A stretch of 64,000 nucleotides of DNA from Octopus sinensis (Eukaryota), in NCBI RefSeq assembly GCF_006345805.1, contig NC_043001.1, positions 115,444,001-115,508,000 of the forward strand, given 5' to 3'. The notes beneath the pieces are model-generated. The model made no database searches, was not told where the DNA came from, and saw nothing but the letters and a program-made list of their open reading frames with translations. The translations under genes were made by a program, and so were the position numbers. Of this stretch, positions 4,867 through 37,842 are shown piece after piece; the first letter of the stretch is position 1, and every line of letters begins with the position of its first letter.

Positions 4867-4897
<31 letters not shown>

Positions 4898-5433: not shown

Positions 5434-6262
5434 TGTAGCGGACTTTCTTTCTCTCTGTTATATATACATGAGTACGGACGTAGTAGATAACAGCTAGCTT
5501 TCGGCATCCCTTTTGCACCCTGTTGTGCCCACTAGTCTGGTTGGTATTGGCGCAATTTTGTCTCTTGCTCTATTACGTGCCAATGTACAACCCAACCAAT
5601 CACAGCCTTTTGATAAGGTCCCGTGATACAGTCTCTTCTAGACCTCAGTTTGCGCCGATAGAATGGTATAAATGCTAGCTTCAACACCATTTTTAGTCTT
5701 TCGGTTCTTGACCTTCTTATGCCTAACCACTGACCACAGAGCACACAGCCAGTTCCAGCGACAACACCAGCAGCCACCATGGAGAAACATCAACACTCGA
5801 CCAACAGCATAGGGCAATTTCCTTCTTCCTCGCCTCCGTCATCTTAACGTCGTCAACAACATCTCTCTCTACGTACACAGCAACCAGCAACACCCACCCA
5901 GGTTCTATTTCCTCACTGTTTGTGAATTACTTCACTATGGTTAACAGCAAGCACAACCTGCGAGAACTTGCTGTATCAAGTGACCGGCAGCAGCATAGTA
6001 GCCACAACTTCTTACACGACATGTGCCTCAACCGGCTTTGTTTCTTCGCCACAACTTCTTGTTACAGCATCTTAACTATTGTGTACCTCGACTACGAACT
6101 GGTATTTATAATCATTGTGTCTGAACATTCTACCGGTTGTGTCTCTCTTTTCCTTCTGGCACTTATACTCATTTATCCTTTTCGTATCTATTGTTGTATC
6201 GACCGTGCGATGTCTTAAAGGAGCCATTCATCGTCACCTCACCTTCGCACGGTCGTTCTACA
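5434..6262 (+). mobile_element. Solo LTR (829 bp), Gypsy-like by its 4-bp TSD
   Basis: Termini TGTAG...CTACA; ATTC duplicated at 5430-5433 and 6263-6266; internal CCAAT (~5597) and TATAAA (~5667) motifs. Confidence 0.75.
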
Positions 6263-6901
6263 ATTCTCAATTCTAATATATATTTTGACTAACAAACAGC
6301 AACAGTCATAGATACATACTGATTGTAATAATGGAATAAGTAGACGTGATTCAAGAGGAAACAACTAGGATTTACGTAACTACTTACATAATATAAATAT
6401 ATATATATATATAAACTGTTGACGCCACATATCTCAGTTGCGTAATTTCGAACACTTTGCAACCACTTCATGTCGAATATTCTCCTGAAACATATAAATT
6501 GGAAGCTGTCCGGTTTTTTTTTCCTTCCATTTTTGTTACTTTCTAGTTTTCACATAACGTCTGGGAGAAATTTTGAAAGGATTTAGAATAAATCCAAGAG
6601 AAGAAAATAGTAGAAGAGAAAACAAGGGGGCAAATGTCGGGAGGTGATAGAAAATTACGTCCAGCTAAATACGTATCGCATCCAGAAAAGACAGGAGTGA
6701 GGGGGGAGGAATGGCCTGTAGTCACGCGGGAACAACAGCCAGAGGAAAAGGGCGGCAAGTGAGAGGATAAGTGAAAGAAACAAAGGGAGAGAGGAGAAGG
6801 AAGAAAAGAAACGAAAGACAGTGAGGGGTGGCAGAAAGATAGACAGGGGACATCAAAGAAGGAGGGGGAAAGATGGAAAATAAAGAGGATTATAGAGGGG
6901 C

Positions 6902-6956
<55 letters not shown>

Positions 6957-6960
6957 AAAG
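6902..6960 (+). repeat. (AAAG)n microsatellite
   Basis: Directly visible. Confidence 0.95.
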
Positions 6961-7271
6961 AAAATAAGGGAACAGAGCGAGTTGCAGAAATTATAAATAA
7001 AAGTAAAAATTCGACAACTGAAGAAGGGTTCGACTTCTCTTGGTACTTGTCCTGTACATGTCTCTCCTGTGTTTACACATTTTTCACTTGTTGGTGATGC
7101 CCTGTTCTTATTGCATATCTTTTGGTGATTTGTCCTGTACTTATCGCTTGTAATTTTCACTCGTTATATAAATGGAGGTGTAGTCAAGTCCTATTTTATG
7201 GACTCAACCATGCTCTAAAATAGGTCGAAAGGCAAGCTACTATAAATCGGCACGAACTTTCCGGACAACCC

Positions 7272-7370
<99 letters not shown>

Positions 7371-7409
7371 ATACATACATACATACATACATACATACAT
7401 ACATACATT

Positions 7410-7725
7410 ATGGCTGCCCCCTCGTTATTGAGTATGGCCATTGCACGAAGCTTAACTGTTACTGGTGCTGTGATCGAATGTGACTTTTTAGCCCAGCTAA
7501 AGATCTACAATGTCTTGTACAAAATTGGCAACTAAAACCTTTACTGGTTATAGCCGGCTGTAGTTGTAACTGGGCTTCATGTACCTTTGCATGTCGTTTA
7601 AATCTTCCTGCCGAATTACACTCTCTTCCACATGCCTGACAGATATGATTAATATGGTGTGTTACACCACCACCAGTGGCCAGGTTGTCACTCATCTGTC
7701 TCGTTTTATGACTACGAAGATGACT
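7410..7725 (-). mobile_element. RTE-like LINE 3' fragment with C-terminal C2H2-like fingers
   Basis: CQACGRECNSAGRFKRH and CQFCTRHCRSLAGLKSH; ends in an (ATGT)n tail; cut at 7726 by the right inverted arm. Confidence 0.6.
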
Positions 7726-8199
7726 TTATTTATTTTCCATGACACGTGTTTCATTTGCTAATAGGAATTACGAAGATAATTACTCGTCTATATAATGGAC
7801 AACAATGGAGAAAAATAATGCCAAAAAATGGTCACTTTCATGTTTTGTTTTATATATATAATATAAGAAAATATATTATGTTGTTTGTTCCTTCTCAAGC
7901 GATACCTGGCTCAGAAGGGCCGGTTTCCCGGTTTCAGTGGTGTATAGGTTCCCCACCTGGACGAGACGTCAGTCAGCTGCAAGATGCAGGAGGAAAGAGT
8001 GAGAGAAAGTTGTGGCGAAAAAGTCAGCAGACGTTTGCCATTACCTTCTGCCGGAATCGCGTGGAGCTTAGGTACTTCAATCATAAACACACGCAGGGCC
8101 CGGTCTGAGATTCGAACCCGTGACCCCTCGACCGCGAGTCTGCTGCTCTAGCCACTAGGCCATGTGCCCCCTCCTATATAATATAATATAATTCACGCG

Positions 8200-8264
<65 letters not shown>

Positions 8265-8650
8265 ATCGTAGTTTGGAGATATTTTCTCAGGCTTGATAGA
8301 TTGATTTGCAAGCTGCAATTTACGGTGAGTATATCCCTTCTTCTACACGTTAAATGTAAATGGCTGTATTGCATATTCAATTTATAAAGTCTTTATAAAG
8401 TCGACAACCCACCCACCCGTCCGCATCGTTACTTGTTTCTATTTTTTGTGTAATAAAGAATTTAGTTCAGTCGGTAGCAATGAGATTTTCTTTTTATAAA
8501 ATATCTCACACGGCTACAACTGCAAAGGATGATAACTCCTTTACACAACAAGAAGCAAGGGCAGCAACAAGAATTTGCTATTAAATAAATTGCTTCCCTT
8601 GTTCGTAAAAATTTTTATTTTTTTAGGAATAAATCTTTCTGTATATATGT
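7726..8650 (+). repeat. Right arm of the long inverted duplication
   Basis: Reverse complement of 4468-5367. Confidence 0.95.
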
Positions 8651-9032
8651 ATATAGCTGAAGTTGTCTGTGTATGGCAGGTTTGGTAGCCTTCAACTAAC
8701 ACTTTCTTCTCCGAGACCCTGCGGCGCAAATTGACCAAAATTGAGAGTATGATAAAAGAAGGCTTGCTCTTCCTTCCGTAGAAGAAAAAATTCAAATCGT
8801 ACCATGTTAACACCAAAAATTATTTACATCAAAATGGTGCATTTTTTCTATGAAAATCCTCATTTGTTACAATATTTTGACTGCCGTGTCGCCTTTTTTT
8901 CGGTGTATTTCAACCAGAAAAATGTTCACTTAAAGAGAATAACAAGCTACATGATGCAGAATTTTTACTTTTCAAAAATTCCAATTCTAAAGGGTCGAAA
9001 CAAACCCGAGCAACGACGGGCGATACTGCTAG
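8638..9032 (+). mobile_element. Non-autonomous Helitron-like element
   Basis: 5' TC followed by a TA-rich start; 3' hairpin CCCG-agcaacga-CGGG (9005-9020), then CTAG (9029-9032) followed by T. Confidence 0.55.
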
Positions 9033-10146
9033 TCTATCATAAAATAAAACGTCGCTTATTACTTGTACTAGACTAAAACCAACGTTCGTGGCCCGTAGGC
9101 TATTGCTTAAAAGTTGCATGTATGTGTTTAATTATACACGGATAATACACAGAAGATTCATGGCTAAAAATAAAGCAGAATAATTTTTTCTGAATAATTA
9201 TATGATGGAGTTGTGTTCTTTTTATCTTGCTTGAAGACAACATATAGAAAACTAATTATAGTGATTTGATATCGAATGTAAAATATGTATTTCGCTCTTT
9301 CAATAAACATAACGAGAATTTCAACTTGTAGATGACTTTTGAATTGTATTTTTGCTTTATAATCCCATCCTGTAGAAACAGAAAGCTTCATTGAAATTTA
9401 ACCCAAATGAAGGATTGAAGCTGAAGCCACATTTATCCTCTGTGGCCCAATATTACGGAGAGATGACTATCAATTAACGCCCAAATCATTTTGTTTCTTT
9501 TCAAAAACAGCCAATATGTTTTTTGAAGTGCCATATGTCACCGAGAGAAAATGTTACTAGATTTTGCTCCAAATATTTATTGGTCAATTTACAAAGTCAT
9601 TAAGGAAGGAAATAGTCATGACATTGTTCATTTCCCCAATACATTACCTGGTGTTTAGCTCATCAACCATAATAAAAGGTAATGTTCAAGTCTACCTCTG
9701 TTGGGTTTGAACTCTGAACTCAAATCCTACTGGCAATGTTAGAACTTTTCTCCATCTTTCTATAATAGATATATGTAATGCTGTACATTTGATATTATGT
9801 GGACTGAACGGGCCAGTGGTATGTGTAATCATGATCTTCTAATTGAACAATCAATATTGTTATCTTTCTTTGGTGAATGATTAGAACAAGGTAACAGTAA
9901 AATTGCCTTCTCAAGTCATAGTGACCCCCTAGGGGCCAGTTTCCTAGTATAAAATAAAACAGTGAAAAGAATAAATAAGGCGGTATTACATTTACCAACC
10001 AGTTACGACCGTTTCAATAACTAGTGAATTGTTACAACGTCTGTCTCTCTGATTGTAAATCGATTAATGAACCAATCCTTCAATAATCTATCTATCCATC
10101 CACCCATCCGTCCGTTCGCCCGTCTGTCCATTCGTCCGTCCGTCGG

Positions 10147-10224
<78 letters not shown>

Positions 10225-10225
10225 C

Positions 10226-10302
<77 letters not shown>

Positions 10303-10324
10303 CCTATCTATCTATCTATCTATC
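10147..10324 (+). repeat. (TCTA)n microsatellite upstream of the Tx1 LINE
   Basis: Directly visible. Confidence 0.97.
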
Positions 10325-10374
10325 CATCTTAGAACACTATGACTGGGTGCTGAAACGACTGCTCAACCACTCAA

Positions 10375-13300
10375 ATGATCAAGATTGGTTGTGTAAATGC
10401 GCGTGGCTTGGGGTCCCCTTGGAAACAAGGGTACCTCTTAAATGACATAAAGTCACATAAGTTAGAAATCATAGCCATAAGTGAGACTAGACTCCACAAT
10501 CCGTGGGCCCTAAAGACCATGTTTGGCGGACAGTTCAACATTTATTTTTCCCCCTGTCTGCCGAGAATGGGCGGTAGTGGCACCGCGGTACTTTTTCGCA
10601 AGAGTCTGGATCTCAAAGTAAGGACAATATTCGTAGACCCGGAGGGTAGACTGGTCGTCCTGGATGTCGACGGCAGCAATGGGTGCGCTTTTCGACTCGT
10701 ATCAGTCTACGCACCGCCCTTAAGAGGTCGGGCGGATTTCTTTCAACGTCTAGAAGTATTCTTGGGAACGTCTCGTCCTTTACTCTTAGTGGGGGATTGG
10801 AATGCTACCTTGGACACGCATGTAGACTACGTGGGTAGAGATAGGAATAGACGGGGATGCAAATGCCTCAGAGACCTGCTCAGACGCTTTCAACTATCTG
10901 ACAGGTTCCGACTAGACCATCCGAATGCGCCAACGTGGGCATGGAGCAACCGCATCGGGTCGTCGAGATCGTATCTAGATAGGATACTGTGTAGGACAGT
11001 AGACAGAGATAGCATAGGATGTCCACAATTCCACACAGTCAGCTACACGGATCACAAACTTGTGACATGTACGCTAGACTTAGGTAAGACACTTAGGCAG
11101 GGTCCCGGATACTGGAAATTAAACGCGTCTTTCCCATCGAGACAGGTTTTCAGAGACCGGATTAGCACACTAGTAAAGAGGGCTTTGACGGGAACCATCA
11201 TCAACAACAAATGGTGGTTTGCCCTCAAGAGAGCAGTAAAAGCAGAAGCGATTAGGTACAGCAAAGCACTAGCCATAGATAGAAATAGAGTAGAGGGTGA
11301 GCTAGTTAAGAAGCTAGAAGAGGCAATTAGAAGCGGCATCGCATCCGACGTTTTGGCGGCGAGGTTGGCCCTCGACCAACACTTCAACGCCAAACACGAA
11401 GGATGTGCTGTCAGAGCTAGGATCCGTGCTCTAAGGAACGAAGGTGTTGGAGCCGCGAGAGAGGCCCGGGTGGCAGAGGCGCAACAGGGCAACAAAACCA
11501 CCATTCGATCACTGGTAGATGAACAGGGGCGCGAATTGCTCGAGCCAAGTAAAATGTGTGAGGCCTTTCAGCAGCATTTTGCCCGACTGTTCGGGACGAG
11601 TGGAGGGCAAGAACGTAGGGTAGACTTCAGTGCCTACCTACATAGCCTGCCACGACTCTCGACAAGAAAGGCAGGGTGCTGCGAAGGTGCCATCACGGCG
11701 GCGGAAGTGCGGGAAGCGATAGCAGAATGCTCGAGGGACAAATCACCGGGTTTGGATGGTCTACCCTACGAATTTTACTATTGTATGCCAGACTTGTTTG
11801 GAGACGTCTTGGCAGCGGTATACTGCAACTGGCAGCAAAACGGGAGCATACCCGGTTTTGTGAGTCGAGGAGCTGTAACTCTGCTGAAGAAAGATCCAAA
11901 CAAGGGAAACATTATAGATAACTTTAGGCCAATCACTCTGCTCAATGCAGACCTGAAAATTTTGACAAAGGTGTTAGCCAAGAGGTTGGCGCTTGTCATG
12001 GAGAAACTGGTCGACAACGCACAAACGTGCGCCGTGCCGGGCCGGAGCATCCATGACAACCTCCATCTGATGCGCTACATCATAGACAGGGTAGTTAACG
12101 AACCTGGCATGGGTGGGGCCTTGATCAACTTGGATCAATCGAAAGCCTTTGATAGGGTAGACCATCGATACTTGGAGGCAGTCCTGAGAGCGGCTGGTTT
12201 CGGTCCCGTCTTCCGCGGCTGGATAGCTGCCTTGTACAGAGGCATCCGTTCGGTAATTCGCGTAAATGGACATCTATCGAGACCCTTCGACATTGCACGT
12301 TCGGTCCGTCAGGGATGCCCCCTCTCGGCGCTTCTATACGTATTGACTCTTGAGCCACTACTGCGGAAGCTGGCGACTCTGAGGGGCATCCCGCGAGAAT
12401 TAGGATGCGGGACGAGCGTGTCTGCATACGCGGACGACGTCACCGTCATAGTGTCAAGCCACGAGCACATCGAGCGGGTCGGCGAGACACTGAAAGACTA
12501 CGAAGCGGTGACAGGAGCAAAAATCAACCGGGAAAAGTCAGTGGGCTTGCGGCTCGGCACCTGGAGAAGCAAGCCCATGCCGTCCACCAGTACCTCCGTC
12601 GTGGGACGCTGGACAGACGGCCCGGTTGAGTTGCTCGGGGTCTGGTTCGGTCCGGACCTCCAAATGGAGAAGAACTGGAACGAGATAACGAGTAGGGTGG
12701 TCACTCTCGCCCAGCAATGGGCCGAGAGGAAACTGTCCCTAAAAGGTCGGGCGGAGGTGGTGAACGCGTACATCGCGTCCATCATCTACTACCGCCTGAC
12801 CGTCGTACCTTGTCCCGACCCTACCATCACCAAACTAGAACGCATCCTCTTCCGCTTCTTGTGGAAAGGATGCGTCCGATGGTCAGGCGATCCATTTGCT
12901 GTCAACACCCATTAAAAGGAGGGCTGGGCATGCCGTGGTTGATGATGCGCAGACACGCGCTGAGACTGCGACATCTCCGGCTCTATGTAGACGACGGTGA
13001 ACAGGTGTGGTCGCCGTTTGTGAGGCACGCATTCCCGCAACTCGTCTCCATGACCGAACTACAGTCGTGGATCAAAAAGAGGCCGAAGAAGGGCGAATGG
13101 CACCGCGAGTGTCGCGTTGCTCTCAAGCAACTCTGCCGTCCCGGGTCGACCTTCAGTGACTTCAACACAACCAAAGCATTCTATAGGGGATTAGTGGAGG
13201 GGAGGTACGACGACGAGCTCGGGGCAACCTGGGCGTCGACGAGGAATACCTGACCCGCCTGTTTCAAACGACTTTCGGCCCGGGACCTATGGACAACTTC

Positions 13301-14190
13301 CAGAGATCCCTGGCCTGGCGGTGCTACCGAGAAGCGCTACCCGTTCGGGATAAGCTCTATAGGCATGGCTCGAGAAACACGGGGCCGACCTGCCCGAGAT
13401 GCGGGCAGAGCGACGAAACCGCTCTGCACGCAATCGTGCAGTGTCCAGCAATTTCCCACCTGTGGGCTTATGTCAAACGACTGCTGTCACGTGTGGGACG
13501 TGTCGGTTTATCAGCCGAGTCTATCGTTAATATCGTCACGCCTCCTTCCTTCAAACGGGAAGGAAGAGCTATTTTTATCATACTTGTGGCTATGGCGAAA
13601 GAATGTATCTGGTGGACGCGTCTGAAAGGATTAGAGACAAACACTTTCCTCTCTGGTCAATCTCTCATCAACTTCTTCAAGTATCACTTGAAGAAAAAAG
13701 TGAGAGTAGAGAGGCAAGTTTTGTCTAGTGAATGTTTTAAAAAAAGATGGGTGAATGTAGCAAGGATGGCACGTATGAATGACGAAGCCACCTTGACTAT
13801 GATTCTATGAACCGTAAAAATTAATACAGAGAGTTGCTTATTTGCAAAAAAAAAAAAAAAAAAGAAATATAACATGTGACTTCATTGACCGAGGTTACCG
13901 TGGTCTTTTCCGTAGGCTTTTCTTTCCACGGGTAAACCTCACCTGTCCTCCCCTTTACACTTCATATTGACATTTCTGTGATAACGATCCCTATTGATCA
14001 ATTTTTTTCCTCTCCCCCTTTTTTTTACCCCCCCTTTTTTTGTCCTCTTTCTCTCCTTTTACGATCCCTTTTGATCGACCCCCCCTTTTTTATTTTATTT
14101 TATTTTTTTTTTTTTAAACCTTCAAAAGAAAAGCTCTACCTTGTAATTTGTTCTATCTGTGTGCAGCCCTGTGTGGCTAATAAAGAAACA
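10375..14190 (+). mobile_element. Tx1/L1-clade LINE: complete ORF2 (APE, RT, zf-RVT) with two 1-bp frameshifts, plus 3' UTR; no ORF1
   Basis: APE motifs NARGL, ISET, GDWN, LDRI, TDH. RT motifs SPGLDG, FRPITLLN, DQSKAFD, RQGCPLS, YADD. Zinc finger CPRC...HAIVQC. AATAAA at 14179, then (TATC)n. Confidence 0.95.
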
Positions 14191-14424
<234 letters not shown>

Positions 14425-15008
14425 TATATTCTTGAAAAATGGAAATTTTTTCACAATTTTTCCAGGATCCTCATCTTTCAATAAACAGAAAGAAAAAAAA
14501 TCCGGGAAAAGTGTAAAATTTAAGAGAGAGGGATGAATTTTTGAAATTTTATTTTCAGGATCGAATCCCCCCACCTGCTTCATTTTTTCACTTTTTCCAG
14601 AATTTTCTCTTCTTACTTATTTTTTTATTTTCTATTTTATTATTATTATTTTTGGGGTGGAGCCAAATACGTAAAAAATACAAAGATTTGAACTCTGATA
14701 ATAATTTTTCTTTTTAATTTTAACTCGTTAACCAGCCACATGTTTCCGGGTGGCACCTCGGGCAAGAGATTTGTTTCAGTCATTTACCTGTGGCCATGCT
14801 GGAGCGCTGCCATTAGTCGAGCAAATCGACACCAGGACTTTTTTTTTGTAAGCCTATTGCTTATTCTATCGGTCTTTATTTGCTGAACCGCTAAGTACGT
14901 TATGTTATCGTAGTTTCGTTAGCTTTGGCTGCTATTTCTAGCATATGGATAGCCTGCTTGAAGGCCTGAAGGGTATATATATATATATATTTATTTTTTT
15001 TATATATG

Positions 15009-15535
<527 letters not shown>

Positions 15536-15559
15536 ATTTCGAGAGTTATCTCCGCTTAC

Positions 15560-16040
15560 TTGCCATCTCCTATTCGAAATTAAATCTACTTCCGGCAACT
15601 TAAATCTACTCCAGATACGTTGCAACCGTTTAATGCTAAACTGAGGTAAGGCATTTTAATTTCATTTCGGGCCATGTAACGCTTGAATGAACATCCTTTC
15701 ATCTTAAACTCTGTCTGGGTGTCTATAAATTAATAATACGATATTAATTATCGTAAATGTGCGTGATCCAATTATGAGATCAGGAAAAATAATGTTTTTG
15801 GTTTTCGCTATGAAACTTACAAGGGCGTGGCCGCTTTGTGGCGGGAACAGAGATGGAGGTAACACCGAGTAGGGTCTCTGTTAAGTCAGCCTGAATTGGT
15901 AGGGTTTTCTGTATATGTTTTAACAAGGGTGGATTTCTCCGCTGTGGAAACTGGATACCATTTATTTAAGAAGAGTGGTCCTGCTGCGCGCACTCGTTTA
16001 CTCGCGCAACCGCGCTAGATAGACGTGATTAGTCGATCCG
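15560..16040. promoter_or_regulatory. Possible promoter / non-coding first-exon region
   Basis: Local CpG enrichment (gcgcgcactcg, cgcgcaaccgcg), ACTTCCGG motif near 15587, plus-strand donor GAG|GTAAGG at 15646. Motifs only, no transcript evidence. Confidence 0.25.
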
Positions 16041-16069
16041 GTTAAACTAAAGCGTTACACCATTCAAAG

Positions 16070-16430
16070 AAACAAAAAAAAATATGTGTAATAGGTGTAA
16101 AACAACTTCCTCTGAACGAATATGATGAAAAAAATGCGCGCACGCGAAAGGGGAGTGGAGGAGAGGCCTCGGAAAATTCACATCGGGAATTTCCGAAAGC
16201 GTCTGAGGGGCTGACCCGGGCACCAAAACAAAAAAAAATAGTGTAATATGTGTAAAACAACTTGCTCTAAACGAATATGACCAAAAAAATGCGCACTCGC
16301 GAAAGAGGGGTGGAGGAGAGGCTTCGGAAATTTCACATCGGGAATTTCCGAAAGCGTCTGACCCGCGCACAAAAAGGCTTCGGAAATTTCACATCTTCAG
16401 TCCACGGCCTGTAAAACTACTTGTTCTAAA
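16070..16430. repeat. 155-bp diverged tandem repeat (two full units plus partial third) with a palindromic core
   Basis: tgtaaaacaactt at 16096 and 16251; GGGAATTTCC at 16185 and 16340. Confidence 0.85.
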
Positions 16431-16909
16431 CGAGTATCAAGAACACACACTCACACATGAATCATAAACTCCGTATTTTTGTACATATTTCGCAAAAAAA
16501 AAAAAAATAAATAAAGAGAAGAAATTCTGGAAAAAGTGGAATGACTGAAACAAATGAAAGAATAAATGTAACTGTGAACACACACATATATATACACACA
16601 TATATATACACACACACACACACACATTTTGCCGCTCTGTGAGTTTATTTATTGAGTTATTCATCCTATATGCGTGTGTTTGTGTGTGTGTGTATAAATA
16701 TATTTATATGTACATATGTATTTGTGTATACGCGTGTGTGTATATACAATAGAAATCTCCATTACCTACTCCCCACCCCAATCATTCCACCTGTTTAATT
16801 AATTTCATTCCTTCTCTTCTCTTTTTCTGTGAGTTTTTCTTTTAATTCTTCACCACCCGACTCCCCTTTCAGACACCATTTTTAATGTGTTTATTCTTTT
16901 CTTTATCAG

Positions 16910-17044
16910 GTGAATCCTCGAGATGAATATGGTCAAACACCGCTGCACTTGGCCTGTGATCGGGGACACTTGCACACTGTCGAAATGTTGTTGGGTCACA
17001 ATGGCATTGATGTCACTGTGGTGGACAAAGATGGAGACACACCA
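16910..17044 (+). CDS. Ankyrin-repeat exon (truncated, fused to a SINE) of the ANK-RING-death domain gene
   Basis: Polypyrimidine tract and CAG acceptor; VNPRDEYGQTPLHLACDRGHLHTVEMLLGHNGIDVTVVDKDGDTP; no native donor remains. Confidence 0.8.
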
Positions 17045-17174
17045 AATCCATTTACAAGGCTTTGGTCGGCCCGAGGCTATAGTAGAAGACACTTGCCCAA
17101 GGTGCCACGCAGTGGGACTGAACCCGGAACCATGTGGTTGGTAAGCAAGATACTTACCACACAGCCACTCCTAC
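17041..17174 (-). mobile_element. SINE family A head fragment (remainder at 17894-17897)
   Basis: Matches other family A copies (aaggctttggtcggcccgaggctatagtagaagacacttgcccaaggtgcc). Confidence 0.88.
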
Positions 17175-17882
17175 AATCTCTTGAACAAGCCTCAAATTGT
17201 GTAGGTCTTTACCTCAATGAGGCCAAAACTGAATACATAAACAAGTGCCTGTCCAACAGTGATTGCATCATCCACACTCTCAACAGTGCACCTTTAAATA
17301 TGGTTTCTGATTACAAATATCTTGGGTCATACATATCATCATCTGGAAAAGACTTTCTAACTAGAAAGGGTATGGCCTGGTCAGCCTGTAATGACATGCA
17401 TAAGATCTGGTCATCAAATCTAAGTAGAGACTTCAAACTTGAAATCTTCAAAGCCACAGTCGAACCAATTCTACTATATGGCTCAGAAACCTGGACGTTA
17501 TCAAAGAAGCTTGAGAGGCGGTTGGATGGAACCTACACTTGCTGCCTTATGAGAGCTCAAAATCTCTCGTGGAAGCGCCATCCAACCAAAATGCAAATAT
17601 ATGGGAAACTACCACCTGTGTCATCTCTTGTGAAAGGTAGGAGAGTCCAGTTTGCTGGACATTGTTGTAGAGCTGAAAAAGAAGTAATTTCTACTCTTCT
17701 CCTCTGGAAGCCATCTACTCGCAACACCAGAGGGCGCACACTCTCCTACCCTGATGTAATCTCCAGGGATACAGGCATCCAGCAACAGGACCTCCGTAAT
17801 GCTATGATGGACCGTGAAGTCTGGCGCAACATGGTAAATTCCATTGTCTCGACCACGGTCGAACAACAATGATGTTGATGAT
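17175..17882 (+). mobile_element. 5'-truncated RTE LINE with an 11-bp TSD
   Basis: YKYLGS, LLYGSETW, FAGHC and GRTLSY motifs; (TGA)-like tail; GCCACTCCTAC at 17164-17174 and 17883-17893. Confidence 0.9.
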
Positions 17883-19103
17883 GCCACTCCTACGCCTAAT
17901 TACATTTGTTTTCTTTAATGACCTAATAACTATTATCTCAGGCTGTGTGATGTTTGTTCTTTTCATGTTTTTCTTTCCTCATCCATTAATTTCTGACGGT
18001 AGTGTATGGTGTTGTGTCTCTATTGCTGAACCAGGTTAGTTAATAAATACATATTATATACACTCTCCAGTATTTTATTGATCTGTATAATATAAATATT
18101 ATCAAGGTACCAGTAAAATAATGGGGATAGATTTAATCACATGTACTGAAAAAACCCTTGTGTTTGTGGAGGAATTGTATATTGATCATGTTGATGTTGA
18201 TATTAGCGGTGTGGACAGTCCAACTGACCACCACCACTGATAATAATACCTTTAATGTTCAAATGAAACAAGGTCATTATGAGATGAACCAAAATATAAC
18301 AGACATCAGGTATATATATGTATATATATATATTAATTGTTTTAGGCATCTGACTGTGGCCATGCTGGGGCATCACCTTGAATTTTTAGTCAAATGTATC
18401 GATCCCAGTACTTTTTTATTTTAAGCATATCACTTATCCTCTCAGCCTATTTGCTGAACCTCTACATACACACACAGACACACACACACACACACGCTCA
18501 CACACACACACATACATAGGCACACACATAGACAAACACCTGTTATGAAGCTTCTTTCAGTTTTCATTTACCAAATCCACTAATAAGATTTTTTTCAGCC
18601 CTAGGTAAGAGTAGAATATACTTGCCTGAGTTTCCATGCGGAGGGATTCAACGTGGAAGAGTGTATTGTTGGGGAAAAAGCTCTTTACACTACAACCATA
18701 TATGGATGTGTGTGTCCATCTATTTCTATCTATCTATCTAACTATATATATATATATATACAGATCATCATCATCATCATACTTGCTTGGCTCAGAGAGA
18801 TTTTCTTGAGGCAGATTTTCCGCAGCTGGATGCTCTCCCTATCGCCAACCCTCTCCTCTTCTTTCCAAGGAAGCTAACATTTGCCAAGAACTAGACATGT
18901 TCCCGCAGAATGTTGGAAATAAGAGACCCTGCTTATATGACATTGGAACTCATTTACAACTATCACACACATGTCAAGACAAAAATACACTCACACACAC
19001 ATATAACACATACACACATGTATACGCACACACATCCAAGATGAATACTCATATATATATACATACACACACAAAGATGTCTGTGTGTGTCTGTGCGTAT
19101 ATA

Positions 19104-22462: not shown

Positions 22463-23034
22463 GAGTGTGTCTCTGTGTATGTGTGTGTGCACGTGCATTA
22501 ATTTCAAGGTGGTGGACACTAACCACCTCAACAGTTTTATGAACCTCATAAGGAAGGGCATCCAGCCGTAGAAACACTGCCAGATTTGACTGGGCCTGAT
22601 GAAGCCTTCTGGCTTCACAGACCCCAGTAGAACCGTCCAACCCATGCTAGCATGGAAAACGGACGCTAAACGATAAACGAACGAACGATATTAATTATAG
22701 CAACATCAAAAGTATACTTTAGAAATTTTAATTCTTCTTTACTAGTCTTCATCTGTTAATCATGTGTTCACTCGTGTTCAGCTCCCCTAAAACTTACAAT
22801 AGTTAGGAATAAAGGTAGATTAAGCTGAAACAATCTCTTTAGGACATCTTAATCCTGTCTAGAACACATTCTCATAGCAACATCTAGAGGATCTTACGAA
22901 GGTTGATTTTACGGACAAACATCAAATGTACATGATCAGTTTGATCAAGTATACAGTAGAAGACAATAATGACACATTGATATCCATCCTGATTTTCATG
23001 TAAATTTTCATTTTCTATTTTTACTTCCACATAG

Positions 23035-23244
23035 CGTTCAGTTCAGTTGGATATTAAGAACAAAAAGAAAATGACACCATTCCTTGAAGCCGTTTCCCTG
23101 GGTTACCTCGGAATGACACACAAGCTAATAGCCCTGGGTGCAAGCATAAATGCTGTTGATGGTGAAGGTAACAGCTGTTTGCACATTACCGTTAGAACAG
23201 AAGTGTTTAATTCCGAGGATGCACCCTTGGATTTACTAAACGAA
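23035..23244 (+). CDS. Ankyrin-repeat exon
   Basis: TAG acceptor (alternative AGs at 23041 and 23046), GTAAGT donor at 23245, phase 0 at both ends; RSVQLDIKNKKKMTPFLEAV...GNSCLHITV...LLNE. Confidence 0.88.
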
Positions 23245-24879
23245 GTAAGTTTTAAAATTTTTTGTGTATATACATGCGTGCGTGTCTCTGTGTGTGTGTC
23301 TGTGTGTGTGAGTGTGTGTGTGTCTGGGTGTCTGTGTGAATTTGTGTATTTGCGAGTCTTTGTGTGAGTGTGAGAGAGAGACAGGCAGACAGACAAGCTT
23401 TGCTTGTCATGTATCAATTCTCACCTATCAACCCCATCCTCCATTACCATTCCGTGATCCAGTCTCCCCCTATGACCCGAGTGATATTATGTAACAAACA
23501 ATATTCCATCTCCTTTCACTCTGAAACATGTCGTCTCACCACGGTCGAGAGGTGACCCATCTCGGTTGTTGGCCATATAAACACAGCCATCACAATGTGA
23601 CGGAGAAGTGGTCTATTTAATAGAGGAGATATTATTTTCAAATAACAATGATGCAGGATAGAAGAGATGTCTGAGCTTTATAGTGCTGGTGCCATGGTAA
23701 ATACATCCAGTCCATTCTATGAAGAATTCTGAGTGAAACTGCTCTCTATCCTACTTCTTGTACACGACATGAATCCACTGACTTCTTGTGGACATGTCAT
23801 AAGAATGTTCAATGTTAGGACACTAGAGAATGAATACAATAAAGCATGGTCCTTAGTGAGATTTCCTGTATTTAAGTTCTGTACTTAGGCACACACACAC
23901 TCATGTACACATACACACACACACTCACACACACACTCACACAGACAAACACACACAAGTAATGATTTTGAGTTTGAGTATATATCTTGTAAAATGCTGT
24001 TTAAAGCCCGTTCACTGTATTCAGCTATCTGATGTCAGCAACAGTATGGACTTCAATACTACTGGACTTTTTGCTGTCATCTCATAAATAAAGCAATTTT
24101 TTTATAATTCTTATATTTTTCAAAATTAAGATAAACAAAGTACTTTTTTCTGTTAATCTAAAATCTGTTAATCATTTTCTACAATGCTCTTCCATCTTTC
24201 TGGTAGACTTGCAAGTTGCCTCTTCCAAAATTCACTTGACCGTGATTAAAAATACTCTTCCATTACTCTTCTGACTTGTCACTAATACCTGCTTCCTTTA
24301 CTTTACCGTCATCATTCAAAGATGCTTCTTGCTTAATTATGGAAACATTATTGATATGTTTGGTTATGTTTGTGTGGTATTGACTTTGTTATGTTATAGG
24401 TGTTTTTGTTTCTGATATAACTTATGTTCTTTCTTCTCATGTTGTGTTATATTATATATACAATACTCTTTCTTATGGCCACATGGTCGCCTTTATCAAG
24501 CCAATATATAGATAGGTTCTTGATGGTTTGTTCTTCCTATATTTGATTTTTCTATTGAATATATTGTGATATTTGTGATTGACAAGTAAATATTTACTCA
24601 TTAATTATCAATAAGCTTGATGTTAATCAATATGGTTTGTCCTGCTCAATATAATGACAATATATTTAGAGGGTGTCTCAGTGTTGAAAATAAAGTAAAA
24701 ACATGAAAATGGGAAATGGACTCAATTAAAGATTATGTAGGAACTCAATACTTTGTAATTGCTTTAATTGGTGGATAAACAACCTATGAGTAAATTTAGA
24801 TGAACTTTTGTGTAATTAGGGGCATTTGTTTTGAATATTTGTGTAATATTGTCATCATTTTATATTTCATTATTTGTAG

Positions 24880-25055
24880 TGCTGCACCGCCCTTAATCTG
24901 AAAATGGAGAAAAGGCTCTCTGGCATGGTGGTAGCTAGATATCTCGCCAGCCAGGGAGCTGACTTTCACCATAAAAACAACAACAATAACACACCATTGG
25001 ACCTCATTAAGGACCCAAATTTGAGAAAAAAATTAGAAACATTTTCACCACCACA
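24880..25055 (+). CDS. Last ankyrin exon
   Basis: TAG acceptor, GTAAGT donor, phase 0 to 2; CCTALNLKMEKRLSGMVVARYLASQGADFHHKNNNNNTPLDLIKDPNLRKKLETFSPP. Confidence 0.88.
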
Positions 25056-26549
25056 GTAAGTATTTCCTGGCAATGGAACAGATAAACCAGTACATTTTCT
25101 ATTTTGTATATAATCATGTTTATATGTTTATTTCGTTTTAATTCTACATCATCATCATCATCATCATCATTTAGCATCCGTTTTCCATGCTAGCATGGGT
25201 TGGACGGTTTAACTGGGGTCTGTGAAGCTGGAAGGCTTCATCAGGCCCAGTTAGATTTGGCAGTGTTTCTTCGGCTGGATGCCCTTCCTAACGCCAACCA
25301 CTCCGCGAGTGTAGTGGGTGTTTTTTACGTGCCACCTGCACAGGTGCCAGACAGAGCTGGCACAACGGCCACTGTCGCTAGTGTTTTTGTCAAAGGCCGC
25401 ACAAAAAACAATATGCAGTTGTTAGGAGATCAAAGAAAGAACATGATTTTGATTACATTCACATGATTCGTAGTGTTGCCAGTTATACTTCACAGTCCAC
25501 CCCAACCTACCCCTCTTCGTTCCCTATTTTAAAGATTTGTGATCAATAGGAAAATATAGATCTAAATAATGAAGTGAATGAATTCCATTTTGAAACTGTT
25601 ACTTAGGATTAAGTGGAATTTATCTGTCTACCAACATCTTTTTCTCACTCTTCTAAGTCCGAATCAGTCAATATTACGAATGATTTCATAGAAAAATAAC
25701 CTACAAACACTCACCAATAGTGTATATATTATATTTCTGCAAATACTGATGGAACATCGCCACATATCTTCATAGAAAAAAAAACTGCCAGGAAACGTAT
25801 ATTATTCAAGTAACACATATACCATTACTAGGTGTTTTAGTCGCCTTTCACTCCCGTATTTTATAAGATTTGGCAATTTCTTTGCCATACATCTCTCTGT
25901 ATTAGCTACTTAAGAAGCAGACACATTTCCCCCTCAGTGAATATACAAAACTTTCTTTGTCTGTTGAAATTCAAATATTACTCTTTTACTTGTTTCAGTC
26001 ATTTGACTGCGGCCATGCTGGAGCACTGCCTTAAGTCGAAAAATTCGACCCCAGATCTTATTCTCTGTAAGCCTAGTATTTATTTGCCGAAACGCTAGAT
26101 TACGTGAATGTAAACACAACAACATAGGTTGTGAAGCGATGGTGGAGGGACAAACACAGACAGACAAATATACACACAAACACACACACACATATATATA
26201 TATATATATGTGATGGGCTTCTTTCAGTTTCCCTCTACCAAATCCACTCAAAAAGCATTAGTCAGTCCGAAGCTATAATAGAAGTCACTTGCCCAAAGTG
26301 CCACGCAGTGGGACTGAACCCAGAACCATGTGGTTGGTAAGCAAGCTACTTACCACACATCTACTCCTGCGCCTATTGTTCATAGATATTGATTTTTGGA
26401 CTGTATAAATATTGATCTGTTTTCTTCAATTGACAAGCCTCAGAAGATTTTCTCTACTTTTACAAATGATCATTTATGTGAATGTTTTAATAATAATATA
26501 ATGTCTACAGAGCGCAGCTGAAGTTACTGGAAAGGGGCAAAATAGGGGA

Positions 26550-29130
26550 CAGAAAACTGCAATTAGTCAAAGAAAGGCAGCAATGGAAGCTAGAAGTAGA
26601 TGCACGATACATATAATAAAACAACCCGAAAGGAGGGAAACAGTTAAAGAGTTATATCAAAGAAAGAAGACATTGGTACACCAGGAAGAGTGTTAGGGAA
26701 TTTCAGGAAATATGGAAGTTTTGAAGAATGCAGTGTCCTGATAGCTAACAAGAGATATCAGTTTATTTCATGCTTCATGTTTTGAAGGAACATATTTGGA
26801 GCGAACAATTTGTCAAAAACTGGTCGATCAATGATTCCTTTAAATACAGCAATGAAATTGCGTCAGGTGTAGCAGATTCAGTGGGTTTTTCAATGTAGTT
26901 TTATATGTATAAGAAGTAACAGGATACCAAGAATAGTTCCATGCAGATCTTCAGAGGTGATTGTATAGGGTGTAGAATGTTATCTTAGTTCTGTAACAAC
27001 TTCCTCTCACCTGAGAATGAAGGAACTGACACAGTTATAAAATTAGAACTCATGCCCATTGCAGACAGCTTCACCGTATTTCTTTTGTGTGGTATAGAAT
27101 TAAAAGTTTGAAGTAGGGATAGATAACATCTGCCCATGAGACCCTATTTTTGATTTAGATGATGTCTTCAAGAGGTTCCATGTGTGGCCCAAAGTAACTA
27201 AATTTAGAGGTAAATACAAATTATGAGAGATGAATCAAGTTTTGAGAGTTTCAAATGTTCCAGGAATTTCTTTCTGACTAAGGACTGACTGGATGGTAAT
27301 TAGCCATTGATGGTGAGACTGACTGGATGGTAATTAGCATTTGATGAATGGTCACCCCTTTTAAACAGGGGGATTAAAGTAGCAACGTTCTTCTGATTCA
27401 GAGTAACAGTTAGTAAAGCTGAATTGGAATAGGCTAAAAAACCTGGTGTAGTAGACAGAGGATGCCAATTTGGGATAAATAATACCATCAAAACATAATT
27501 GAACAAATGCTTTAAGAGTTGTTGCAGGAGTAAATTCAAAAGATGTGATGGAATTTAGTCTCCATAGCAGTGAAGATCATACATTTAGATTTTCAATGGT
27601 AAAAATACCAGCATTGCATTAAACAGTTGGCTCTTTACAATCTGACTTGAGGATTGACTTTGAAGAGATTGAAGTCTCCGGTTTTCTATATAAGAACTTC
27701 CGGAATCTATCCAGGTTTTTCTCTCTGTGTTGGTCCGAATCAAGTGCAGCCATTTTAATCACCTTTTTCGTGTGGTTGGATGCTCTGTTGTATATTTTAA
27801 AACTCTCTCTTCTATGTAATCTGTATTCCCATTCAACAGTTTGTTGATCTTTCCTCACAAAGTGGACTGCTGCTACGGTCTGTCATATTCCGCTTTTGAG
27901 CACTTGAACATATTTATGTGGCACTCCGATGCTTTGCATATGACTCACATCGGATTAAACATTTGCTGTGAGATCTCTTCAGAATCGTAAACGTGGGGTC
28001 AGTCAGAAGACTGCAACTCAGTACAACAGGTGTTCTGGTCAGCATTGTTCCAGTAAAAGCAAGCAGTTTGGAAGATGATGGTAGTTTTTTCTTTCTTTCC
28101 ATTAAAAGTATATTGACAAGGTTAGAGAATGATTAGAGCGAGTTAAATGTATCTTGGTAGGGTGGCTGATAATTTCAGAAGCAATGGTCTATAGCAGATC
28201 CAAAGTTTTGTTATCTCTTGTGGGAGAGATGACTACATGGGACTAGTTTGAATCCAACACAAAACGAAAGAAGTTGTTTTTAGGGGACAGTGAAAGTCAT
28301 CCCAGTCAATCCTTCAGTAATTGAAGCCACATTTCTCTTAATGTATTTTCCTCTAATGATAGCCTTTGACCCCTCTATCCCTTCCCTTGTTCTCTTTAGA
28401 TTCTTATATCTGCTTTAGCTCCGTCGGATTGGCAATTAGTAGCTGTATAATGGTCAAAAATAATGTTCTCCTTTATAATTCTTAGATTCCTGCAAATTCT
28501 AAGCCAGACTGTCTGTCTCCACAGAAAGAGACTTTTCTGTGTAGGTGGGTACCTGCGACCCCTTCCCTCTCAGTTATCCCAGTATGCTCTATGTGGGCGG
28601 TTTTTCTTTTTTTTCTTCTTCTTCTTTTTTTTTCTTTTCTTTGCTCCACAAAATTCCTTCAGCCTTTATAATTCTAACATAGCAGTTTTGTGAAATGAAC
28701 AGAGGTGTGACAAGTATCTTATCATATAGCAGGAAATTATACCCACCTCATTGTGGATTAATCATGGATAGATTCATCGTCTGTGAGTATGAAATATCTC
28801 CTCATATCTCTGGAAATTTGCACTTACATTATGGATTGATTCACCTTCTCTGTGAAGCTAATAAGCTTTTTAAAACCTGTTATAAGACTGTGCATCATCA
28901 TTAGAGAACTTTGGAAGTCCGCTTACAACCTAAATTTGCTTTTTATAGAACTATCTCCGATACTTCATGAGTGTAGCCTCACCCACTAGGATGCTTGGAG
29001 AACTCATATGTGTTTTAGCTGATGAGTACGGGACACTTGTATTTGCTGCAATATTTGCAGCTTTTAATAAAGCTTGTCTTTGTATGAAACAATTTTACTA
29101 AAAAACTAATCCATTCTTGTTGCTTTTTTC
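26550..29130 (-). mobile_element. Highly degenerate CR1-like LINE
   Basis: Residual motifs PTRDNKTLDL (APE end), IPLFKRGDHSSNANYHPVSLT and TFNSIPHKR (RT). Confidence 0.7.
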
Positions 29131-29971: not shown

Positions 29972-30114
29972 ATGTGTGTTTTGTGAAGACGTAGTGGCCA
30001 CAGAGACGTTCTTTCCATGTAAACATCTTTCGCTGTGTAAGAAATGCTGTCTCCCAAAGATACCTAAACAATGCCTCAAGTGTGGACGGAATATAACGAG
30101 CAAAAATAGTTTGG
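29972..30114 (+). CDS. RING-finger exon (C3HC4, IAP/Mind bomb type)
   Basis: CAG acceptor, GTAAGA donor, phase 2 to 1; C-x2-C-x11-C-x-H-x3-C-x2-C-x8-C-x2-C (CVFC...PCKH...CKKC...CLKC). Confidence 0.9.
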
Positions 30115-31368: not shown

Positions 31369-31419
31369 TTGGTCCAAATTCGTCAAAGATGGAAGTCCAG
31401 ATGGTGGCAGGACCAGTTG
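31369..31419 (+). CDS. 51-nt linker exon
   Basis: TTTTTCAG acceptor, GTGAGT donor, phase 1 at both ends; VGPNSSKMEVQMVAGPV. Confidence 0.7.
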
Positions 31420-35651: not shown

Positions 35652-35723
35652 GGAGTCCAGAGCTGAAGGAGAAGGATCTTCTGAGAGTGGCTAAGACGTT
35701 AGGAAGAGATTGGTGGCAAGTAG
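35652..35723 (+). CDS. 72-nt exon: start of a death-domain-like fold
   Basis: CAG acceptor, GTGAGT donor, phase 1 at both ends; GSPELKEKDLLRVAKTLGRDWWQV. Confidence 0.85.
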
Positions 35724-37642: not shown

Positions 37643-37842
37643 CTATGTTTTTAGAAGTTAATACAACTGAACTGAAAATTGATGATGAATCTATTGACGC
37701 TGTAAAACAAGGCTACCTGATGCTTTACGAATGCTTCAAAAATTGCGACCCAGAAACACGGACACACGCAACATTAAGTGCAGCTCTTGAAGAAGCTGAA
37801 TGTTTCGCTGCGATGGAATGTCTGTCATTAGACGCAAAGTGA
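37643..37842 (+). CDS. Terminal exon: rest of the death-domain-like fold and stop codon
   Basis: TTTTGCAG acceptor, phase 1; AMFLEVNTTELKIDDESIDAVKQGYLMLYECFKNCDPETRTHATLSAALEEAECFAAMECLSLDAK*. Confidence 0.85.

What the first reader, a model, noticed from the sequence alone, without database searches (positions are those of the whole stretch)
16910..17893. Ankyrin exon fused in frame to a SINE and an RTE LINE, with a possible SINE-supplied rescue donor
Seen: the exon stops after GDTP, where ACCA (17041-17044) is shared with the SINE family A sequence (ctACCAaatcc), suggesting a microhomology deletion of the exon end and native donor. An RTE piece then sits in the SINE with an 11-bp TSD. The whole stretch is one stop-free 320-codon frame. 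The SINE carries TTG|GTAAGC at 17141 in phase 0, matching the phase-0 acceptor at 23035; splicing there adds 32 SINE-derived residues and keeps the RING and death domain in frame. Inference: two possible products (rescued ligase, or ANK-RT-tail chimera), or else a pseudogenised allele.
Basis: partly seen in the sequence, partly recalled or inferred. Interest (0 to 1): 0.7.

Follow-up and report, generated by a model that had tools for sequence, protein, structure and literature searches.

The report
SINE splice donor replaces deleted exon end
In one octopus ankyrin-RING gene copy, a 0.9-kb deletion removed the end of an exon and its splice signal, and a fragment of a common mobile element now supplies the replacement signal used by the public gene models; this is a clean but ordinary example of mobile-element exonization.

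Summary
The window is Octopus sinensis chromosome CM016863.1.

- **Deletion:** An ankyrin exon (16910-17044) breaks off after GDTP. Six paralogous loci from two species continue with 20 more exon bases, a GTAAGT donor and about 0.87 kb of intron. All of this is missing here.
- **SINE fragment:** In its place sits a 138-nt head fragment of an abundant SINE. It lies antisense to the gene and is 3'-truncated. It is joined through ACCA microhomology on the left and CCT(A) on the right.
- **LINE insertion:** A 708-nt 5'-truncated LINE tail with an exact 11-bp target duplication later landed in the SINE.
- **Splice donor:** The antisense SINE carries TTG|GTAAGC at 17141. This is the only GTRAG site in 1.2 kb.
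- **Gene models:** All three RefSeq isoforms of the gene (MIB2-like X1-X3) can be rebuilt exactly from 17132-17140 joined to 23035. The predicted junction is therefore already annotated, but the coding sequence starts at an ATG inside the SINE, not in the ankyrin exon.

The 320-codon frame is mostly the LINE's own reading frame and is about a 1-in-9 coincidence. RNA evidence was not available.

The parts
16910..17044 (+). Truncated ankyrin-repeat exon. It holds 45 codons and has an intact acceptor, TTTATTCTTTTCTTTATCAG|gtg. Paralogs have 155 nt.
   Evidence: Pfam Ank E=2.8e-9. tblastn of paralogs reaches 17044 and no further.
17041..17044 (.). ACCA microhomology shared by the exon and the SINE at the left breakpoint.
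   Evidence: Paralog alignment and SINE-copy alignment.
17041..17174 (-). SINE head fragment, larger part. Its sense strand is the minus strand. An A-box-like TGGCTGTGTGG and a B-box-like GGTTCAGTCCC lie on the minus strand. The fragment lacks the 3' two thirds of the family.
   Evidence: 84-95% identity to other copies.
17132..17140 (+). ATGTGGTTG, the first coding segment (MWL) of RefSeq isoforms X1-X3. It is entirely antisense-SINE sequence.
17141..17146 (+). SINE-derived 5' splice site GTAAGC (context ttg|GTAAGC), phase 0.
17175..17882 (+). 5'-truncated LINE fragment. It carries the C-terminal 232 codons of the reverse-transcriptase reading frame, with stop TGA at 17870-17872 and a short TGATGTTGATGAT tail.
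   Evidence: Homologs carry RVT_1, the closest at 76% identity.
17164..17174 (.). Left copy of the 11-bp target-site duplication GCCACTCCTAC (SINE sequence).
17883..17893 (.). Right copy of the 11-bp target-site duplication.
17883..17898 (-). Remaining 5' end of the SINE head. CCT(A) at 17895-17898 is shared with the resumed intron sequence.
17895..18760 (+). Intron sequence where homology to the paralogs resumes. It lies 893-900 nt downstream of the left breakpoint in five paralogs and 735 nt downstream in L002.
17996..18034 (+). Relic of a 37-nt mini-exon that encodes ..YxVVSLLLNQ in paralogs. Here it is 39 nt, its acceptor cAG has become cTG at 17993-17995, and its donor GTTAGT at 18035 is intact. 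The gene models skip it.
23035..23244 (+). Next coding exon (ankyrin repeat), phase 0 at both ends. It is the acceptor partner of the SINE donor.
24880..25055 (+). Coding exon.
29972..30114 (+). RING-finger exon (zf-C3HC4_3, 25.8 bits against a cut-off of 27). The cysteines and histidine are intact.
31369..31419 (+). Alternative coding exon, present in X1 and X2.
35652..35723 (+). Alternative coding exon that starts the death-like domain, present in X1 and X2.
37643..37842 (+). Last coding exon, covering the rest of the death-like domain and the stop. X2 uses an alternative acceptor at 37655.

Best explanation
This is a lineage-specific copy of the large octopus ankyrin-RING-death-like gene family that RefSeq calls 'MIB2-like'.

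**Ancestral structure.** It was a 155-nt ankyrin exon, a GTAAGT donor, a roughly 0.98-kb intron, a 37-nt mini-exon, an intron, and then the exon at 23035.

**History (shown and inferred).**
1. A SINE inserted antisense into the first of these introns (inferred).
2. A deletion of about 0.9 kb plus roughly 270 nt of SINE tail joined exon codon 45 to the middle of the SINE at a 4-nt ACCA microhomology. The outcome is shown; the two-step order is inferred. The deletion removed 20 nt of exon and the native donor.
3. A 5'-truncated LINE tail then inserted 34 nt downstream of the future donor, making an 11-bp target duplication (shown).

**Splicing now.** The antisense strand of the SINE head carries a near-consensus 5' splice site in its family consensus. 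Here it lies 96 nt after the breakpoint, in phase 0. It now serves as the donor to the 23035 exon. The mini-exon is bypassed, and its acceptor has decayed. The junction is shown in the RefSeq models; RNA support is inferred.

**Products.** The annotated proteins start at an ATG inside the SINE. They keep about one and a half ankyrin repeats, the RING and the death-like domain. If transcription starts upstream, the same splice would also keep the 45 ankyrin codons in frame and add 32 SINE-derived residues. The LINE and the mini-exon relic are then simply intronic.
For: - **Breakpoints.** Six paralogous loci (L002-L007, including one from O. vulgaris) align up to 17044 and again from 17895. Between these points they carry 735-900 nt that are absent here, and none has a SINE there.
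- **Native exon end.** Paralog DNA shows ...ACACCA CTGCATGAGGCAGTTCAGCG|GTAAGT, followed by the mini-exon G CGA AAC TAT ... AAC CAG|GTTAGT.
- **SINE orientation and truncation.**
  - Full copies are about 400-420 nt, with a variable (TACTCTTT)n repeat at the far end.
  - A-box-like and B-box-like motifs sit at positions 12 and 55 of the minus strand only.
  - The window copy stops at position 138.
- **LINE.** The 11-bp target duplication is exact. The fragment is homologous to proteins with RVT_1.
- **Gene models.** P0044, P0006 and P0005 (XP_029636546.2, XP_029636547.2, XP_036358898.1) are reproduced exactly from 17132-17140 + 23035-23244 + 24880-25055 + downstream exons, all with GT-AG introns. 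The recorded gene range starts at window 17132.
- **Donor quality.** ttg|GTAAGC is comparable to the gene's other donors and is the only GTRAG in 16910-18100.
- **Indirect support for transcript evidence.** Paralog models whose proteins do not reach the ankyrin exon start at an ATG in or just before the 23035-type exon (MTPLLEAV..., MLSKGSVQ...). This suggests, but does not prove, that the MWL exon rests on transcript evidence.
Against: - No RNA data could be inspected. The 9-nt first coding segment could be an ab initio completion by the annotation pipeline.
- The annotated coding sequence does not include the ankyrin exon.
- No upstream ankyrin exons exist within 16.9 kb. The 5' part of the gene may therefore be dead.
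- dN/dS against paralogs is about 0.68, and the exons are no better conserved than the introns. Purifying selection on this copy is not evident.
- No clear O. vulgaris or O. bimaculoides ortholog was found.
- The two-step order (insertion, then deletion) cannot be told apart from a one-step event.
- ARAGORN and Rfam do not recognise a tRNA in the SINE head.
Confidence: 0.6

Rival explanations
1. One-step origin. A double-strand break in the exon or intron was repaired by capturing a SINE cDNA. This would be endonuclease-independent retrotransposition, or filler-DNA end joining. The exon's 3' end ...ACCA primed on an internal UGGU of the SINE RNA. The other end joined at CCT(A). The event deleted 0.9 kb and installed the replacement donor at the same time.
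For: - There is microhomology at both junctions: ACCA on the left and CCT(A) on the right.
- The SINE lacks its 3' tail and has a near-complete 5' end.
- No target duplication of the SINE is visible.
- The target deletion coincides exactly with both ends of the insert.
- None of the six paralogs shows an intermediate state with a full SINE at that site.
Against: - Such events are rare compared with ordinary insertions and deletions (established knowledge from human L1/Alu studies).
- SINEs are dense in these introns. There are 12 hits in the window plus three loci, so a later deletion ending inside a SINE is unremarkable.
- The right-hand microhomology depends on where the family's true 5' end lies, which is uncertain.
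Confidence: 0.3
2. The locus is a decaying, 5'-truncated duplicate (pseudogene). The SINE-to-23035 junction is splicing noise or an annotation completion, and no functional protein is made.
For: - No N-terminal ankyrin exons are found upstream.
- The exon is truncated and the mini-exon acceptor is destroyed.
- dN/dS is about 0.68, with exon divergence close to intron divergence.
- The RING and Death matches are below Pfam's cut-offs.
- No ortholog is annotated in sister species.
Against: - All downstream exons keep open frames and canonical splice sites. Three alternative isoforms are modelled.
- The RING cysteines are intact.
- The 3' half is 92-98% identical to another annotated family member, L008. 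The family as a whole evolves fast, so a high dN/dS is not diagnostic.
Confidence: 0.3
3. Read-through product. The donor is ignored, and a chimeric ankyrin-SINE-LINE-tail protein of at least 320 residues is translated from 16910-17872.
For: The frame is open for 320 codons.
Against: - 232 of the 320 codons are the LINE's own intact reading-frame tail.
- The in-frame join is about a 1-in-9 coincidence.
- The fragment lacks the RT core; Pfam finds no RVT_1 in it.
- A strong donor lies upstream of the LINE.
- No gene model contains it.
Confidence: 0.03
4. Assembly artefact. The exon-SINE join results from a mis-join or collapse through a repeat.
For: The region is repeat-rich, many paralogs sit on unplaced scaffolds, and an N gap exists at 60117-60216.
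Against: - Both flanks are collinear parts of one paralog unit with similar divergence from the other copies.
- The breakpoints show base-precise microhomology. The SINE is truncated internally rather than bridged.
- The LINE insertion has a perfect target duplication.
- There is no N near the site.
Confidence: 0.03

Closest known systems
Exonization of antisense SINEs, with Alu exonization in primates as the type example (own knowledge)
   Same: - A splice site that is latent in the antisense consensus of an abundant SINE is used by a host gene.
- SINE-derived bases enter the mRNA and the coding sequence.
- 6 of 9 aligned copies of this family keep GGTAAGC.
   Different: - The SINE does not create a new cassette exon. 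It replaces the deleted native donor of an existing exon and, in the models, also supplies the start codon.
- The host is a cephalopod and the SINE family is unrelated to Alu.
Microhomology-mediated deletions, and retrotransposon-associated or endonuclease-independent insertions with target deletion, as described for human L1/Alu (own knowledge)
   Same: - There is a 4-nt microhomology at the breakpoint.
- About 0.9 kb of target is lost.
- The element has no 3' tail and no visible target duplication.
   Different: - The order of events is unresolved here.
- No sister-species empty or intermediate site was available.
Octopus tRNA-derived SINEs (OK, OR1 and OR2; Ohshima and Okada 1994, cited in PMC4824008) and octopus RTE LINEs (RTE-2_OV, PMC9115989)
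   Same: - The SINE is abundant and has A-box-like and B-box-like motifs with a short-repeat 3' tail.
- The LINE fragment has its stop codon 10 nt from its 3' end and a simple-repeat tail instead of poly(A), as RTE elements do.
   Different: - Neither element was matched to a named family.
- Rfam and ARAGORN see no tRNA.
- The LINE's clade was not placed phylogenetically.
MIB1/MIB2 E3 ubiquitin ligases
   Same: Ankyrin repeats are followed by a C-terminal RING of the zf-C3HC4_3 type.
   Different: - No MIB/HERC2 or ZZ domains were detected.
- A death-like domain follows the RING.
- The gene belongs to an octopus family with more than 80 protein clusters in the search, not to the conserved MIB orthologs.

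Membership tests
SINE-derived splice-site exonization | The splice site lies inside sequence homologous to a SINE family. | tested here: met
   GTAAGC at 17141-17146 lies within the 138-nt SINE head, which is 84-95% identical to other copies.
SINE-derived splice-site exonization | SINE sequence is included in a mature transcript or coding sequence. | tested here: inconclusive
   All three RefSeq proteins start with MWL, encoded by 17132-17140, and are rebuilt exactly. The RNA evidence behind the models could not be inspected.
Microhomology-mediated deletion | Sequence present in relatives is absent here, with short shared bases at the junction. | tested here: met
   735-900 nt are present in six paralogs and absent here. 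ACCA is shared at 17041-17044.
Endonuclease-independent (break-repair) retroelement insertion | 3' truncation, no target duplication, a target deletion and junction microhomology, all arising in a single event. | tested here: inconclusive
   All four structural signs are present. The same structure arises from an insertion followed by a deletion. No intermediate locus was found.
tRNA-derived SINE | Internal Pol III A and B boxes at tRNA-like spacing. | tested here: met
   TGGCTGTGTGG at position 12 and GGTTCAGTCCC at position 55 of the minus strand, with none on the plus strand. The B box departs from GGTTCRANNCC at two positions.
tRNA-derived SINE | The head is recognisable as a tRNA. | tested here: not met
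   ARAGORN found no tRNA in the window. Rfam found no tRNA match at E<=10 in this copy or in a full copy.
tRNA-derived SINE | Many dispersed copies with a defined 5' end and a short-repeat 3' tail. | tested here: met
   12 hits in the window plus three loci, and 9 more in three further loci. The (TACTCTTT)n repeat varies at the far end.
RTE-clade LINE | Homology to a LINE reverse transcriptase. | tested here: met
   309 homologs at E<=1e-10. The longer ones carry PF00078 directly upstream of the aligned part.
RTE-clade LINE | A very short 3' UTR ending in simple repeats, without poly(A). | tested here: met
   The stop is at 17870-17872 and the element ends at 17882 with the tail TGATGTTGATGAT.
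RTE-clade LINE | Phylogenetic placement of the reverse transcriptase within the RTE clade, and a single reading frame with an N-terminal AP endonuclease. | not testable with these tools
   The fragment lacks the 5' part. The homologs carry no names, and no reference RTE sequences were at hand.
MIB1/MIB2 orthologs | MIB/HERC2 and ZZ domains N-terminal to the ankyrin repeats. | tested here: not met
   Pfam finds only Ank-type and zf-C3HC4_3 matches in P0044, P0009 and P0001.
Octopus ankyrin-RING-death family | Ankyrin repeats, a C3HC4 RING and a death domain in that order. | tested here: inconclusive
   Ank_4 passes its cut-off. The RING scores 25.8 bits against a cut-off of 27. Death scores 17.1 against 22.6, E=0.006, over profile positions 3-80 of 86. 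Several family members have PF00531 on record.

The most novel reading that the evidence does not exclude
A single break-repair event captured a SINE cDNA. In one step it destroyed the native donor and installed a working replacement. The resulting gene makes a functional ankyrin-SINE-RING-death ligase whose second ankyrin repeat is replaced by 32 SINE-encoded residues. That would be a self-healing exon, and a way for antisense SINE heads to diversify a fast-evolving, possibly immune-type, gene family in octopus.
Probability: 0.12. Interest if true: 0.5.

Novelty: new member of a known kind. Interest (0 to 1): 0.3.

Why it matters
- It is a base-precise, datable example of how a mobile element can compensate for the loss of a splice donor in a cephalopod genome, where SINEs are very abundant and often embedded in transcripts (PMC9115989).
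- The antisense consensus of this SINE family carries a ready-made 5' splice site. Every antisense intronic copy is therefore a latent donor. A genome-wide count of such usage could explain part of the odd N-termini in octopus gene models.
- For annotation, the MWL start of three RefSeq proteins is SINE sequence and probably marks an incomplete or remodelled 5' end.
- The case does not change any general principle.

Tried and rejected
- **tRNA origin.** ARAGORN and Rfam at E<=10 gave no tRNA match for the SINE head. Orientation therefore rests on box motifs, the sharp end and the repeat tail.
- **Upstream exons.** tblastn with about 50 family proteins and blastn with paralog loci found none in 1-16900. 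Paralog homology stops at 16541.
- **Sister-species ortholog.** Both family searches gave no O. vulgaris or O. bimaculoides protein above 88% identity, so no empty or intermediate site could be fetched.
- **Intermediate state in paralogs.** Six loci (L002-L007) lack a SINE at the site. L008 does not reach the region.
- **Failed look-ups.** P0006, P0019, P0004 and P0175 were not on record.
- **Transcript-derived proteins.** No run-assembly (Logan) protein matched this gene closely.
- **LINE clade.** The homologs are unnamed metagenome ORFs. Pfam sees no RVT_1 in the fragment itself. The supplements of PMC9115989 hold only truncated transcriptome files.
- **Other copies of the LINE.** None were found in the window or the loci.
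- **Insertion-mediated deletion by ordinary target-primed insertion.** I first considered this and then rejected it. The exon-side end of the SINE is its 3' side, and it lacks the tail.
Full report
**Source and gene.** The window is Octopus sinensis chromosome CM016863.1 (GCA_006345805.1). Window position x corresponds to about record position x + 115,444,000. A query made of the ankyrin exon and the next two exons found dozens of Octopus proteins named MIB1/MIB2-like and similar. Two of them were 100% identical over the last two exons only (P0005, P0006). Their cluster also holds isoform X1 (P0044). All three isoforms begin MWLRSVQLDIKNKKK.

**Checking the observation.**
- The exon opens after AG at 16908-16909 and encodes 45 residues of ankyrin repeat, up to GDTP at 17044 (Pfam Ank E=2.8e-9).
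- From 16910 to 17869 there is no stop, and TGA follows at 17870-17872.
- GCCACTCCTAC stands at 17164-17174 and at 17883-17893.
- TTG|GTAAGC lies at 17138-17146 in phase 0. It is the only GTRAG between 16910 and 18100.
- The exon at 23035 starts in phase 0 after cacatAG.

**What the paralogs show.** I fetched six paralogous loci: L002-L006 from O. sinensis and L007 from O. vulgaris.
- All six align to the window up to exactly 17044 and again from exactly 17895.
- Between these points they hold 735 nt (L002) or 893-900 nt (the other five).
- None has a SINE in that interval.
- The native exon runs 20 nt further (CTGCATGAGGCAGTTCAGCG) to a GTAAGT donor in phase 2.
- About 0.98 kb downstream lies a 37-nt mini-exon (G CGA AAC TAT GAA TTG GTG TCT CTA TTG CTG AAC CAG|GTTAGT). 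It restores phase 0 before the exon homologous to 23035.

The 19 residues missing between GDTP and RSVQ were therefore encoded by 20 nt of exon plus the mini-exon. The window still has the mini-exon as a relic at 17996-18034. It has a 2-nt insertion, and its acceptor has changed from cAG to cTG.

**The SINE.** The 138 nt at 17041-17174 plus 17894-17897 match a family with 12 hits in the window and three loci, and 9 more in three further loci, at 78-95% identity.
- Aligning copies with their flanks shows a unit of about 400-420 nt. On the window's plus strand it continues to the left of ACCAAATCC with ...GGGCTTCTTTCAGTTTCCGTCT, an internal microsatellite, and about 200 nt more.
- That far end carries a variable number of TACTCTTT repeats.
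- The opposite end (...CCACTCCTGCGCCT) is sharp.
- On the minus strand, TGGCTGTGTGG at position 12 and GGTTCAGTCCC at position 55 resemble Pol III A and B boxes. Nothing similar is on the plus strand.

I therefore read the minus strand as the SINE's sense strand. It follows that the copy here is antisense to the gene, keeps only its 5' 138 nt, and is truncated on its 3' side at the exon junction.

ARAGORN and Rfam do not call a tRNA. A tRNA origin is thus an inference from the box motifs and from the literature on octopus SINEs (Ohshima and Okada 1994, cited in PMC4824008).

**Junctions.** On the left, ACCA (17041-17044) is shared by exon and SINE. Base 17040 fits only the exon and base 17045 only the SINE. 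On the right, CCT, and probably CCTA (17895-17898), is shared by the SINE's 5' end and the resumed intron. No target duplication of the SINE is visible.

**The LINE.** 17175-17882 encodes 232 residues on the plus strand, ending 10 nt before the element's end, which is a TGATGTTGATGAT tail.
- It has 309 homologs at E<=1e-10, up to 76% identical over its full length. The longer ones carry RVT_1 immediately upstream of the aligned part.
- It is thus a 5'-truncated LINE 3' end with a perfect 11-bp target duplication made of SINE sequence, so it arrived after the SINE.
- The short 3' UTR and simple-repeat tail fit the RTE clade, which is active in octopus (PMC9115989). I could not place it phylogenetically.
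- No other copy is in the window or the loci.

**The splice.**
- Joining 17132-17140, 23035-23244, 24880-25055, 29972-30114, 31369-31419, 35652-35723 and 37643-37842 gives P0044 exactly.
- Using the alternative acceptor 37655 gives P0006, and skipping two exons gives P0005. All introns are GT-AG.
- The recorded gene range starts at window 17132.
- The donor ttg|GTAAGC compares well with the gene's other donors.
- In-frame ATGs in the exon are at 16985 and 17132. Because the models start at 17132, their transcript evidence probably begins downstream of 16985. That is what junction-spanning reads alone would give (inference).
- Paralog models whose proteins do not reach the ankyrin exon start at an ATG in or just before the 23035-type exon. 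This suggests the MWL segment is evidence-based, but I could not see the RNA data.

**How it most likely arose and works.**
- Shown: the exon end, donor and about 0.87 kb of intron are gone, an antisense 3'-truncated SINE head fills the gap, a LINE came later, and the SINE donor is the annotated donor.
- Inferred: the SINE first inserted whole into the intron, and a microhomology-mediated deletion then removed everything between the exon's ACCA and the SINE's ACCA.
- The alternative is a single break-repair event that captured SINE cDNA. It fits the same structure, with microhomology at both ends, no tail, no duplication and a target deletion. It cannot be excluded without an intermediate locus.
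- Ordinary target-primed insertion with a deletion is excluded, because the exon-side end is the SINE's 3' side and lacks the tail.

**Is the product functional?** This is unresolved.
- For function: the downstream frames, splice sites and RING cysteines are intact, and three isoforms are modelled.
- Against function:
  - There are no N-terminal ankyrin exons within 16.9 kb.
  - dN/dS against L002 and L003 is about 0.68.
  - The exons diverge as much as the introns.
  - The RING (25.8 against 27 bits) and Death (17.1 against 22.6 bits, E=0.006) scores are below Pfam's cut-offs, although several family members have PF00531 on record.
- If the ankyrin exon is included, the helices of the second repeat are replaced by 32 SINE-encoded residues.

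**The 320-codon frame.** 232 of the codons are the LINE's own reading frame. The join needs the junction to fall in the SINE frame that stays open through to the LINE junction (1 of 3) and the LINE frame to coincide (1 of 3). I give the chimeric protein about 3%.

**Comparison and novelty.**
- Mechanistically this is SINE exonization of the antisense-Alu type, in the special form of donor replacement after a deletion.
- The deletion is of the microhomology type known from break repair and retroelement-associated rearrangements.
- The gene is not a true MIB ortholog, since no MIB/HERC2 or ZZ domains were found. It belongs to a large octopus ankyrin-RING-death-like expansion with more than 80 protein clusters.
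- It is a new member of a known kind. The junction is already in RefSeq, though its SINE origin appears not to be noted.

Noticed in passing
window 4505-5372 and 7721-8624: Large inverted repeat. Two adjoining arm pairs (506 nt and 395 nt) are 98% complementary around a spacer of about 2.3 kb. It could be a recent inverted duplication or a foldback-type element.
   Followed up: partly
window 10354-12912 (+), flanked by arrays at 10028-10442 and 13936-14533: An 853-codon open LINE reading frame with Exo_endo_phos and RVT_1 domains. It is embedded between long (TCTA-type, 'LSIY') microsatellite arrays. Similar arrays with LINE fragments lie at 42414-43529 and 44680-45452.
   Followed up: partly
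window 60117-60216: A run of 100 N (assembly gap).
   Followed up: yes
window 22689-26777 versus L002; 29590-38299 versus L008; 16541-17044 versus L004-L007: The gene is a mosaic of paralog affinities. The middle exons are closest to L002 (94%). The RING-to-death half is closest to LOC115227419 on L008 (92-98%). The ankyrin exon flank is about 91% to four other loci. This suggests recombination or gene conversion within the family.
   Followed up: partly
window 29971-30093 versus protein P0004: The C-terminus of the RefSeq paralog P0004 matches this RING exon at 83% identity but in a different reading frame. The likely cause is a frameshifted model or a disabled RING in that paralog.
   Followed up: no
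SINE copies at window 15399, 26237, 32243, 61914 and in L002, L003: 6 of 9 aligned copies keep GGTAAGC on the antisense strand. Antisense intronic copies of this family are therefore latent 5' splice sites genome-wide.
   Followed up: partly
window 67-2273 (-) and 53532-55468 (-); also 56560-58585 (-): Two copies of one reverse-transcriptase-bearing element family lie at opposite ends of the window, and a third related RT element lies nearby. All are on the minus strand.
   Followed up: no
window 16040-16457: Two tandem copies of a roughly 230-nt unit match L003 5669-5915. Homology to all paralogs upstream of the ankyrin exon ends at 16541.
   Followed up: no
L007 24381-26546 (O. vulgaris OX597817.1): The intact exon-donor-intron-mini-exon arrangement (893-nt interval) is conserved in an O. 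vulgaris paralog. The ancestral structure therefore predates the split of the two species.
   Followed up: yes
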